A stretch of DNA of 64,000 bases, taken from IMG/VR virus record IMGVR_UViG_3300032782_000001, positions 124,001-188,000 of that record. One strand, written 5' to 3'. The translations under genes and the position numbers were made by a program. Below the pieces are notes generated by a model, which saw only the letters and a program-made list of their open reading frames with translations, made no database searches and was not told the origin of the DNA. This document shows positions 61,091 to 61,481 of the stretch, piece by piece. The stretch's first letter is position 1. The number at the start of each line of letters is the position of its first letter.

Positions 61091-61431
61091 CAGGATGACA
61101 TTACAGTGTCGACAATGCCAGTCGGGCAAGAGTCGTCAGGATGTCCTGACGACTCCGGAAACAATTGAAGACAATCGCGGCAGTATTTTATCACTAATTG
61201 TGATTCTACTGTCCTGATTGTTCCTGGCTGGATGACTCTTATCGTCAGAGTCATCCCTTCCAGATTCAAGTATATTACCGAGGGTACAGCAGTAATTTTA
61301 TCTGTTGCTACCATAACTTGAGAATAAATTCTATGGTGTTCTCTTTCCCAGTTCAAATCGAAATTAGCATATCCAGGGACATCTTTCCCTCGAATGCGGA
61401 AACTACCAGACCAACGTCCGTCGGTGATCAA
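61090..61431 (-). CDS. Zn-binding protein with VMSS tag
   Basis: CRDC...H...SCPTGIVDTVMSS*. Confidence 0.6.
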   Translation of the reverse strand: MITDGRWSGSFRIRGKDVPGYANFDLNWEREHHRIYSQVMVATDKITAVPSVIYLNLEGMTLTIRVIQPGTIRTVESQLVIKYCRDCLQLFPESSGHPDDSCPTGIVDTVMSS

Positions 61432-61481
61432 GAATCCATTACCTTTTCTACGATTCCATCATGATCGGAACTGGAATTCAT
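61428..61481 (-). CDS. 17-aa micro-ORF MNSSSDHDGIVEKVMDS (not in ORF track)
   Basis: ATGA overlap with helicase stop and TTGA overlap with next start; ends in the tag. Confidence 0.55.
   Translation of the reverse strand: MNSSSDHDGIVEKVMDS

What the first reader, a model, noticed from the sequence alone, without database searches (positions are those of the whole stretch)
61428..61481. 17-aa micro-ORF that is almost only the tag, coupled to the helicase
Seen: MNSSSDHDGIVEKVMDS* starts in the helicase stop (ATGA), and its stop overlaps the next start. It is followed by two more tagged genes (VMSS, IMEA). Inference: a free tag peptide acting as competitor or titrator, or the remnant of a deleted tagged gene.
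Basis: partly seen in the sequence, partly recalled or inferred. Interest (0 to 1): 0.65.

Follow-up and report, generated by a model that had tools for sequence, protein, structure and literature searches.

The report
Tag-only mini-ORF: likely gene relic
A 17-codon reading frame wedged between the helicase and the next gene of a 436-kb wetland phage really does end in the peptide tag that about 140 of this phage's proteins carry, but it is most likely the leftover tail of a lost tagged gene, not a purpose-built free tag.

Summary
Window 61428-61481 (minus strand) encodes MNSSSDHDGIVEKVMDS*. Its ATG overlaps the DnaB-like helicase stop (ATGA). Its TGA overlaps the TTG of a 113-aa ORF ending VMSS, and a 205-aa gene ending IMEA follows.

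The tag is real and striking. About 140 ORFs of this complete 436-kb phage end in [IV]V-x-x-[VI]-M-[ED]-S-stop. The motif is almost never internal, is selected at the peptide level, sits on bodies with no detectable similarity to each other, and is shared by related huge phages. The micro-ORF tail scores 17 bits; no frame end in shuffled genomes reached that.

The micro-ORF itself is not conserved. In 12 relatives the helicase-primase interval holds zero to five genes, usually a full-length zinc-knuckle (CxxC...H...C) plus tag gene right after the helicase. None has the mini-ORF. The mini-ORF lacks all three cysteines. A second, weak tag-like end (MMES*) lies out of frame in the same 47-nt spacer. 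Start/stop "bridging" ORFs occur at chance frequency in this genome.

Best reading: debris of a turned-over tagged gene, plausibly still translated by coupling. A functional free-tag peptide is not excluded (about 0.1).

The parts
61478..63007 (-). DnaB-like replicative helicase, 509 aa, untagged. Its TGA stop is overlapped by the micro-ORF ATG.
   Evidence: PF03796, 1.6e-16; more than 180 homologue clusters, nearest 78% identical.
61428..61481 (-). 17-codon micro-ORF MNSSSDHDGIVEKVMDS*. The last 8-9 residues match the genome-wide C-terminal tag.
   Evidence: 17 bits; 0 in shuffles; no SD upstream (and the sequence); not called by public gene callers.
61448..61477 (-). Second, weak tag-like end in the helicase frame just after its stop: IPVPIMMES*, ending in TAG at 61450-61448. 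Only V(-7) and MES match (2.7 bits). The same nucleotides, ATGGAATCGTAG, give G-I-V in the micro-ORF frame.
   Evidence: The regex [VILM]M[ED]S* has 4 short-frame hits in the genome, 2 of them in this spacer, against about 0.9 per shuffled genome.
61090..61431 (-). 113-aa ORF with TTG start. Its C-terminal module is CxxC-x10-H-x4-C followed by the tag helix (...GIVDTVMSS). It is the orthologue or paralogue of the gene that follows the helicase in relatives.
   Evidence: three invariant Cys; AF2 model with helix 103-112 at pLDDT about 80; codon score low but typical of small tagged ORFs.
60473..61090 (-). 205-aa tagged gene ending IMEA. Its ATG overlaps the 113-aa stop (TGATG).
   Evidence: 39% identical and colinear with the 203-aa gene of relative L027, which ends YVMES; public call of 183 aa.
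59849..60472 (-). Primase-type CHC2 zinc-ribbon protein, 207 aa. It marks the far border of the variable slot.
   Evidence: PF01807, 1.2e-7; primase PHROGs.

Best explanation
The micro-ORF is evolutionary debris. The interval between the helicase and the primase is a gene-turnover slot that in this phage clade is filled with small accessory genes of a 'zinc knuckle + C-terminal tag' family. In this genome one such gene (possibly two) has been almost entirely deleted. What survives is its extreme 3' end, the tag codons and the stop that overlaps the start of the next gene. That end is kept because it carries the next gene's initiation region. An ATG created by the helicase's last codon plus its TGA happens to open the frame, or was the lost gene's own start. 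Ribosomes finishing the helicase can therefore restart, translate 17 codons, and terminate on top of the TTG start of the 113-aa gene. The ORF may thus serve as a passive translational bridge, with the tag peptide as a by-product. Shown here: the anatomy, the tag statistics, the variable slot, the lack of conservation and the loss of the cysteines. Inferred: the deletion history, translation, and the bridging role.
For: (1) Slot variability. In 12 relatives (helicase 60-78% identical) the interval holds 0 genes (L025), 1 (L024, L004, L027), or 3-5 (L011, L023). A full-length CxxC...HP..C...IV..VM.S gene directly follows the helicase in L004, L008, L012, L024, L023 and L011, with tandem paralogues in L011 and L023. 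(2) No relative has the mini-ORF. In 131 kb of relatives' loci, every frame end scoring at least 10 bits sits on an ORF of 59 aa or more. (3) The family has three invariant Cys, and the mini-ORF has none. (4) Of 141 tagged tails, the neighbouring 113-aa gene's tail aligns best with the mini-ORF (SS.H.D...GIV..VM.S, rank 1). (5) A second tag-like end lies out of frame in the same 47-nt spacer. (6) Intergenic tag-only frames occur about once per genome at non-homologous places, 0-30 nt upstream of the next same-strand gene: G000 428485, G001 168460, G002 240341. This is as expected if the 3' ends of lost genes survive because they hold the next gene's start region. (7) The start/stop overlaps occur at chance frequency. 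(8) There is no promoter, terminator, RNA structure (z -0.18) or Rfam match. (9) The 113-aa gene starts at TTG without a clear SD, in a genome with weak SD use, so upstream translation would help it.
Against: The tag is intact and scores as well as its neighbour's (17.1 against 18.0 bits), so there is no visible decay. The frame is open from an ATG. All three strong tag-only frames in three genomes begin with ATG and are 17-22 codons long, which hints at a class rather than random debris (n=3, not significant). At the nucleotide level the tail is no closer to any paralogue than tags are to each other (59% against a median best of 61%), so the deletion cannot be dated or reconstructed. The similarity upstream of the tag is short, and part of it (G-I-V) could be a by-product of the overlapping MES* string. 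The only near-identical strain (a second wetland study) covers just the last 17 nt, which are unchanged.
Confidence: 0.55

Rival explanations
1. Inert relic. The origin is the same as in the best explanation, but the frame is not translated to any useful extent and has no role even as a bridge. The 113-aa gene initiates on its own.
For: No SD precedes the ATG (sequence). Public gene callers call neither this ORF nor the 113-aa ORF. Bridging ORFs arise by chance in about 7% of such gaps.
Against: ATGA overlaps are the classic setting for termination-reinitiation. The whole chain from the 276-aa gene through helicase, mini-ORF, 113-aa, 205-aa, primase and 150-aa gene has only -4, -1 or 0 nt junctions once the mini-ORF is counted.
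Confidence: 0.18
2. Functional free tag. The 17-mer is made on purpose and occupies the unknown tag reader, competing with or titrating the roughly 140 tagged proteins. Its output is tied to helicase translation.
For: The tag is intact (17 bits). The ORF is coupled to an essential, presumably well-translated gene. Tag-only ORFs of 17-22 codons with ATG starts occur in two related genomes as well. The motif is strictly C-terminal (126 terminal against 1 internal at 17 bits or more), which argues that the tag is read in trans, so a free peptide could in principle compete.
Against: It is not conserved at this locus in any of 12 relatives. The other tag-only ORFs are at unrelated loci with unrelated N-terminal halves. 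One copy of a 17-mer would have to compete against about 140 tagged proteins. No receptor is known. In the zinc-knuckle family the tag helix starts at the last Cys of a folded module, and the peptide lacks that module.
Confidence: 0.12
3. Regulatory upstream ORF. Translating the tag codons just before termination (a nascent-peptide or termination effect) tunes reinitiation on the 113-aa gene. The 9-codon MRVRSVMES* frame, 27 nt upstream of a 511-aa gene, would be a second case.
For: The conserved stretch (about 8-12 residues ending at the stop) is the part of a nascent chain that lies in the upper exit tunnel at termination. Selection is on the peptide, not the DNA. Four short tag-ending frames, across three genomes, lie 0-30 nt upstream of a same-strand gene.
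Against: Tagged genes show no special stop context or coupling compared with untagged genes (TGA 64% against 53%; 4-nt overlaps 15% against 11%). There is no attenuator-like RNA structure. There is no conservation. The hydrophobic spacing (i, i+1, i+4, i+5) and the AF2 helix suggest a folded, protein-binding helix.
Confidence: 0.08
4. Recoding. UGA readthrough would append IPVPIMMES to the helicase. Alternatively, a -1 shift would append the micro-ORF tail to the helicase, or would fuse the micro-ORF to the 113-aa frame at GAA AAG.
For: A tag-like MMES* lies in the helicase frame 9 codons after its stop. An A-rich GAAAAG lies where a -1 slip would enter the 113-aa frame (sequence).
Against: There is no X XXY YYZ slippery heptamer in the last helicase codons. 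The readthrough tail scores only 2.7 bits. Helicases of all relatives end at the same ...DDM(M/L)L position, untagged. Orthologues of the 113-aa protein have only 3-8 residues before their conserved Trp, which matches the TTG start.
Confidence: 0.03
5. Chance. The tag-like ending is a coincidence in an intergenic spacer.
For: Short motifs do occur by chance. The 4-residue regex appears about 0.9 times per shuffled genome.
Against: The tail scores 17 bits over 12 positions, with 0 such frame ends in 5 shuffles of each of three genomes. It is intergenic, on the coding strand, and adjacent to two tagged genes.
Confidence: 0.01

Closest known systems
Gene remnants in phage 'moron' or accessory-gene slots (hypervariable intervals between conserved replication genes)
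   Same: A variable number of small ORFan genes sits between two conserved core genes (helicase and primase). There is presence/absence polymorphism among relatives. A short leftover retains the junction with the downstream gene.
   Different: The leftover is recognisable only because the lost gene carried a proteome-wide C-terminal tag. It still forms an intact ORF that overlaps both neighbours.
Translational coupling by termination-reinitiation at overlapping stop/start codons (ATGA, TGATG) in bacterial and phage operons
   Same: The ATGA overlap with the helicase and the TTGA overlap with the next gene; every junction in the chain is -4, -1 or 0 nt.
   Different: Here a 17-codon spacer ORF would relay ribosomes across a 47-nt gap. 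Such bridging ORFs are no more frequent than chance in this genome, so selection for the relay is not shown.
Portable C-terminal recognition peptides read in trans: ssrA/ClpX degrons (LAA-COOH), PTS1 (SKL-COOH), Hsp70/Hsp90 EEVD-TPR, ESCRT-III MIM helices read by the Vps4 MIT domain, SSB acidic tails
   Same: A short motif fixed at the extreme C-terminus of many unrelated proteins. It has an acidic and hydrophobic character, is helix-forming, and is under peptide-level selection.
   Different: The sequence ([IV]V-x-x-[VI]-M-[ED]-S) matches none of them. About 140 carriers occur in one phage genome. No reader has been identified. The phage lacks ClpP, Lon, S41 and PDZ_2 (the one PDZ model searched), Hsp70 and the 20S proteasome.
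Pup-Mpa tagging (a helix-forming tag bound by the coiled coil of the proteasomal AAA ATPase)
   Same: This phage encodes an Mpa/ARC-like ATPase (TIGR03689, 302 bits, E 8e-90, below that model's 505-bit cut-off; canonical KFVG pore loop). The tag is an acidic amphipathic helix.
   Different: The tag is gene-encoded, not conjugated. There is no Pup, PafA/Dop or 20S. The ATPase has no orthologue in three tag-bearing relatives, so it cannot be the general reader.
Regulatory leader peptides (ermCL, tnaC, cat/cml leaders)
   Same: A very short ORF immediately upstream of, and overlapping, the start region of a gene, with a conserved peptide at its end.
   Different: No alternative RNA structure, no terminator and no conservation across relatives.

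Membership tests
Genome-wide C-terminal tag ([IV]V-x-x-[VI]-M-[ED]-S-stop) of this phage clade | Tail matches the tag profile well above chance | tested here: met
   17.0-17.1 bits, the 5th percentile of 121 training tags; 0 frame ends at that score in shuffles.
Genome-wide C-terminal tag ([IV]V-x-x-[VI]-M-[ED]-S-stop) of this phage clade | Motif is immediately followed by the stop codon | tested here: met
   VMDS-TGA. Genome-wide, 126 terminal against 1 internal at 17 bits or more.
Genome-wide C-terminal tag ([IV]V-x-x-[VI]-M-[ED]-S-stop) of this phage clade | Tag is attached to a protein body (all other carriers are about 48 aa or longer) | tested here: not met
   17 aa in total. The next smallest tagged ORFs are 53-54 aa in G000.
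Zinc-knuckle + tag family (CxxC-x8-11-H-x3-4-C-x0-3-[IV]V..VM.S) that follows the helicase in relatives | Three invariant cysteines (plus His) upstream of the tag | tested here: not met
   Alignment A3 has C84, C87 and C102 invariant in 18 members. The mini-ORF has no Cys, only one His.
Zinc-knuckle + tag family (CxxC-x8-11-H-x3-4-C-x0-3-[IV]V..VM.S) that follows the helicase in relatives | Position directly downstream of the helicase | tested here: met
   Full-length members occupy this position in L004, L008, L012, L024, L023 and L011.
Zinc-knuckle + tag family (CxxC-x8-11-H-x3-4-C-x0-3-[IV]V..VM.S) that follows the helicase in relatives | Residual similarity beyond the generic tag (G-I-V, S-x-H-x-D) | tested here: inconclusive
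   The neighbour's tail is the best of 141 (score 33 against 32 and 31). G-I-V may derive from the overlapping MES* string.
Functional small protein or decoy peptide | Conserved in related genomes | tested here: not met
   Absent from 12 relatives' helicase loci. Tag-only ORFs in G001 and G002 are at other loci and are not homologous.
Functional small protein or decoy peptide | Evidence of expression | not testable with these tools
   Only two DNA runs hold the sequence, and no RNA run does.
Functional small protein or decoy peptide | A receptor that binds the tag | tested here: inconclusive
   No canonical C-terminus readers are encoded. The one complex prediction gave no verdict.
Attenuator or leader-peptide uORF | Alternative RNA hairpins or a terminator between the uORF and the gene | tested here: not met
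   No terminator-like site; fold z-score -0.18; no Rfam family.
Programmed frameshift or readthrough extension | Slippery heptamer or a conserved extension in relatives | tested here: not met
   No X XXY YYZ in the last helicase codons. Relatives' helicases end untagged at the same place.
ssrA/ClpX-type degron | Non-polar extreme C-terminus (such as LAA-COOH) and a cognate protease | tested here: not met
   The tag ends in E/D-S. No ClpP, Lon, S41 or ClpX-type AAA_2 above cut-off in the phage. Host unknown.
Pup-proteasome system | Pup, the PafA/Dop ligase and the 20S core together with the Mpa ATPase | tested here: not met
   Only an Mpa/ARC-like ATPase is present. Pup, Pup_ligase and Proteasome are absent. 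The ATPase has no orthologue in G001-G003.

The most novel reading that the evidence does not exclude
The mini-ORF is a deliberately produced 'naked tag'. It would be a 17-residue peptide made in step with helicase translation that occupies the still unknown reader of a proteome-wide C-terminal signal, or that acts as a nascent-peptide uORF. Either way it would set the fate of, or access for, about 140 tagged accessory proteins. The similar 17-22-codon tag-only ORFs in related huge phages, and the 9-codon MRVRSVMES frame, would then be members of the same regulatory class.
Probability: 0.12. Interest if true: 0.8.

Novelty: new variant of a known kind. Interest (0 to 1): 0.45.

Why it matters
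On its own the mini-ORF is probably ordinary genomic debris. It matters because it points at something far less ordinary. Roughly a fifth to a quarter of the ORFs of a complete 436-kb phage, and of its relatives, end in one strictly C-terminal 8-12-residue peptide. That peptide is under peptide-level selection, and the proteins that carry it share nothing else and match no known family. I found no description of this tag in Pfam or in the paper library. Such a signal implies a shared reader, for turnover, localisation, export or remodelling, that is unknown. The mini-ORF is nature's own minimal version of the tag. It defines how little sequence is needed to look like a tag, and it gives a ready-made peptide for pull-downs and competition tests. 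The relics also show that tagged genes turn over quickly in fixed slots.

Tried and rejected
- **DNA-level element.** I tested whether the tag is a promoter, recombination site or RBS shadow. Rejected: third codon positions are free, Ser uses both TCN and AGY, and nothing is conserved after the stop.
- **Recent duplication of another tag.** Rejected: the best nucleotide identity is 59%, typical of any pair of tags.
- **Selection for the bridging architecture.** Rejected as evidence: 10 observed against 8.5 +/- 2.3 expected.
- **Special stop or coupling context of tagged genes.** None found.
- **Family scans.** Pfam on 22 tagged proteins and PHROGs on two of them, the 113-aa and 218-aa ORFs, gave no hits.
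- **Word searches.** The 113-aa protein gave nothing. The 218-aa form found only itself.
- **Literature.** Two searches gave nothing relevant.
- **Structure search.** Foldseek of the AF2 model against PDB gave nothing at E 0.001 or better. The Atlas feature search gave only unnamed clusters at 0.90.
- **Phage-encoded readers.** ClpP, S41, PDZ_2, Lon_C, Hsp70, 20S, Pup ligase and Pup are absent.
- **Complex prediction.** I tested the N-terminal domain of the conserved Cdc48-D2-like AAA protein with an 81-aa tagged protein. There was no verdict (0.28, below the 0.32 mark), so this is evidence neither for nor against binding.
- **Conservation of the 9-codon MRVRSVMES frame.** The downstream 511-aa gene has no homologue in viral contigs or in G001-G003, so this could not be tested.
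- **Host inference from the Mpa-like gene.** Only generic AAA matches at 36-43%.
- **RNA features.** No Rfam family, terminator or promoter of note.
- **Searches not run.** The large representative-protein search was not used. A 12-residue motif of 26-35 bits cannot reach significance in 1.8 billion proteins, and no claim here rests on the absence of relatives.
- **Housekeeping.** No alternative genetic code was invoked; TGA is the commonest stop. The reads call used 4,101 letters.

Full report
**What is there.**
The genes around the finding lie on the minus strand. A DnaB-like helicase (61478-63007, 509 aa; PF03796) ends ...GCG TCA TGA. The A of TCA plus TG of the stop form an ATG (61481-61479). 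That ATG opens the frame MNSSSDHDGIVEKVMDS, closed by TGA at 61430-61428. This TGA overlaps TTG 61431-61429, the first possible start of a 113-aa ORF ending ...GIVDTVMSS. Its stop in turn overlaps (TGATG) the ATG of a 205-aa gene ending ...VKTIMEA. That gene abuts a primase-type zinc-ribbon gene. Three independent assemblies give the identical sequence.

**The genome.**
The window is part of a single 436,316-bp contig from a wetland metagenome. It is a complete virus record with direct terminal repeats. A strain about 99% identical occurs in a second wetland study. That strain covers only the last 17 nt of the mini-ORF, which are unchanged.

**The tag.**
- **Number of carriers.** Across the genome about 140 ORFs end in one consensus, roughly (E/D)(E)x[IVL]V-x-[EQD]-[VI]-M-[ED]-[SA]-stop. 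Of these, 58 end exactly VMES, 16 VMDS and 11 IMES.
- **Strictly terminal.** At 17 bits or more there are 126 terminal and 1 internal match in frames of 60 aa or longer. There are none at frame ends of shuffled genomes.
- **Peptide-level selection.** Third codon positions are nearly free, serine uses both TCN and AGY, all three stops occur, and nothing is conserved downstream.
- **Unrelated bodies.** After removal of the last 12 residues, 141 tagged ORFs fall into 134 BLAST clusters. None of the 22 tagged proteins scanned matches any Pfam family.
- **Who is not tagged.** The recognisable enzymes here (helicase, PolA, primase, DnaJ, dCTP deaminase) are untagged.
- **Clade-wide.** The degenerate DNA pattern for [VI]M[ED]S-stop occurs 71, 44, 22 and 4 times in this genome and three relatives. 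The reversed-pattern control gives 0 everywhere. Per-genome profiles give 134 and 75 tagged frame ends in the two complete relatives.
- **Likely shape.** The hydrophobic positions (-8, -7, -4, -3) alternate with acidic ones (-11, -10, -5, -2), as on one face of a helix. In an AlphaFold model of the 113-aa protein the tag is a helix (residues 103-112, pLDDT about 80) that starts right after the last cysteine.
- **Prior description.** I found none.

**Is the mini-ORF's tag more than chance?**
Yes. Its last 12 residues score 17.0-17.1 bits, low among real tags (5th percentile) but equal to its neighbour's 18.0 bits. No frame end in shuffled genomes reaches that score. In the first scan, which only covered frames of 12 aa or more, it is the only frame shorter than 58 aa scoring at least 10 bits. 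A 9-aa frame scoring 12.7-14.0 bits appeared in a later scan.

**Relatives.**
The helicase has more than 180 homologue clusters. The nearest are 78, 78, 74 and 72% identical, and many lie on contigs of 240-445 kb. I read the region downstream of the helicase in 12 distinct relatives. The helicase-primase interval is a turnover slot:
- no gene in L025;
- one gene in L024, L004 and L027;
- three to five genes in L011 and L023;
- in L002, additional genes plus a primase interrupted by an inserted ORF.

The commonest occupant, directly after the helicase, is a 106-140-aa protein. Its C-terminal 33 residues read CxxC-x8-11-H-P-x-x-x-C-x-x-x-[IV]V-x-x-VM-x-[ST], with three invariant cysteines. The 113-aa ORF here belongs to this family. 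Its N-terminus (ITDGRWSG) lines up with the orthologues' I(S/T)HWGAE, which supports the TTG start. The 205-aa gene is the orthologue of the single occupant of L027 (39% identity, colinear to the tagged end). No relative has the mini-ORF. In 131 kb of relatives' loci every frame end scoring at least 10 bits sits on an ORF of at least 59 aa.

**Evidence that the mini-ORF is a leftover.**
- It has none of the three cysteines.
- Its alignment with the neighbour's tail (SS.H.D-----GIV..VM.S) is the best among all 141 tails, though by a narrow margin.
- The 47-nt spacer holds a second tag-like ending, IPVPIMMES*, in the helicase frame directly after its stop. Only V(-7) and MES match (2.7 bits). 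The 4-residue pattern has just four short-frame hits in the genome, two of them in this spacer, against about 0.9 chance hits per genome.
- The nucleotides ATGGAATCGTAG that spell MES-stop there spell G-I-V in the mini-ORF frame. Either the mini-ORF is a chimera of two relic tails, or this is a coincidence of roughly 0.1-1% (my own estimate from codon choices, not a computed result). I cannot decide between the two, but both fit debris better than design.
- Short intergenic frames ending in a good tag occur about once per genome at unrelated loci. Examples are MYAILTVVISLRLNQIAEIMGS in G001 and MYVHYDNMAHVKKIMET in G002, together with a 9-codon MRVRSVMES in this genome. Each lies 0-30 nt upstream of the next same-strand gene. 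That placement is what one expects if deletions spare the 3' end of a lost gene because it carries the next gene's initiation region.
- The 'perfect' start/stop overlaps are not evidence of design. 10 of 113 comparable gaps are bridged by such an ORF, and 8.5 +/- 2.3 are expected after shuffling gap interiors.

**What it probably does now.**
The ATGA overlap makes reinitiation after the helicase plausible. There is no Shine-Dalgarno sequence, and this genome uses them weakly (GGAG in 25% of upstream regions against 7% background). The 113-aa gene starts at TTG, also without a clear SD. With the mini-ORF counted, every junction from the 276-aa gene upstream of the helicase to the 150-aa gene after the primase is -4, -1 or 0 nt. 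I therefore think the frame is translated and passively relays ribosomes to the 113-aa gene. This is inference. There are no RNA data, and there is no promoter, terminator, RNA structure or Rfam family.

**What the tag might be for.**
Strict terminal placement argues for a reader that sees the free C-terminus or a terminal helix. The phage encodes no ClpP, Lon, S41 protease, PDZ_2 domain, Hsp70, 20S proteasome, Pup or Pup ligase. It does encode the following:
- An Mpa/ARC-like proteasomal ATPase (TIGR03689, 302 bits, below that model's 505-bit cut-off; canonical pore loop). It has no orthologue in three tag-bearing relatives, so it cannot be the general reader.
- A Cdc48-D2-like AAA protein that is core to the clade (56-62% identity). 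Its Walker B and pore loop look degenerate on my reading of the sequence.
- A full DnaJ next to this locus in all relatives that extend that far.

One complex prediction (AAA N-domain with a tagged protein) gave no verdict. My best guess is that the tag is a docking helix that gives a large set of accessory proteins a common fate. Tagged genes concentrate at 5-120 kb and in islands near 257-272 and 409-424 kb, and I take them to be early accessory genes, which is not shown. Turnover or remodelling by an AAA+ machine is somewhat more likely than localisation or export. This is a hypothesis only.

**Verdict.**
The 'free competitor peptide' half is unsupported but alive (about 0.12). A uORF or nascent-peptide role is possible (about 0.08), recoding is unlikely (about 0.03), and chance is excluded. 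The mini-ORF is of modest interest. The tag system it belongs to is the remarkable object and deserves its own study.

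Noticed in passing
whole genome G000 (window = G000:C1:124001-188000); tagged ORFs in the window include 16752-17036(+), 19277-19549(+), 28221-28568(+), 35484-36209(+) and 45957-46328(+): About 140 ORFs (roughly a fifth to a quarter of all) end in the same strictly C-terminal peptide, ...[IV]V-x-x-[VI]-M-[ED]-S-stop. It is under peptide-level selection, sits on unrelated bodies without Pfam matches, and is shared by related 390-430-kb phages. Its function and reader are unknown.
   Followed up: partly
window 61448-61477 (-): A second, weak tag-like end, IPVPIMMES*, lies in the helicase frame directly after its TGA. It overlaps the micro-ORF's D-H-D-G-I-V codons in another frame.
   Followed up: partly
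G000:C1:428485-428514 (-) = L029:3485-3514: A 9-codon ORF, MRVRSVMES*, lies in the divergent intergenic leader, 27 nt upstream of the ATG of a 511-aa protein with KOW and sigma-70 region-4-like matches. Its conservation could not be tested, because that gene has no homologue in the relatives.
   Followed up: partly
G001:C1 about 168460-168528 (-); G002:C1 about 240341-240394 (-): Tag-only ORFs in two related genomes: MYAILTVVISLRLNQIAEIMGS (22 aa, 17.5 bits) and MYVHYDNMAHVKKIMET (17 aa, 19.9 bits). Both lie in spacers between same-strand genes and are not homologous to the one here.
   Followed up: partly
G000:C1:313359-314855 (+) = L072:865-2361: The phage encodes an Mpa/ARC-like proteasome ATPase (TIGR03689, E 8e-90, 302 bits; below that model's 505-bit cut-off) with a canonical pore loop. 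It has no Pup, Pup ligase or 20S core and no C-terminal GQYL-type motif. The gene has no orthologue in three related genomes.
   Followed up: partly
G000:C1 about 261100-262605 (-) = L073:1174-2679: A core-clade single-domain AAA protein resembles the D2 domain of VAT/p97 (E 1e-48). It has an uncharacterised 220-aa N-terminal domain, Walker B ED instead of DE, and no aromatic pore loop.
   Followed up: partly
G000:C1:266511-266534 (also G001:C1:121434-121457): Two convergent tagged genes overlap at their last codons through the palindrome in ATCATGGAATCATGATTCCATGAT, so each strand reads IMES-stop.
   Followed up: no
window 61090-61477: Public gene calls leave a 453-nt 'gap' after the helicase. 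Neither the mini-ORF nor the 113-aa zinc-knuckle + tag ORF is called. Small tagged ORFs generally have weak codon-usage scores.
   Followed up: yes
window 58229-59413 (+): A full-length type-I DnaJ (J domain, CXXCXGXG zinc finger, C-terminal domains) is encoded on the opposite strand between the replication genes. It is conserved at this position in every relative whose contig reaches that far, with no phage Hsp70.
   Followed up: partly
L002:8233-9874; proteins P0033, P0099, P0107: In one relative the primase gene is split by an inserted 280-aa ORF on the opposite strand. Several related helicases are 750-870 aa long and carry intein or LAGLIDADG domains.
   Followed up: no
G001:C1:138133-138870: Two convergent ORFs (141 and 73 aa) both end IVESIMKS, and a further tag-like end (VNHEILAKPVMES*) lies 23 nt after the first. 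This looks like a recent inverted duplication plus a relic.
   Followed up: no
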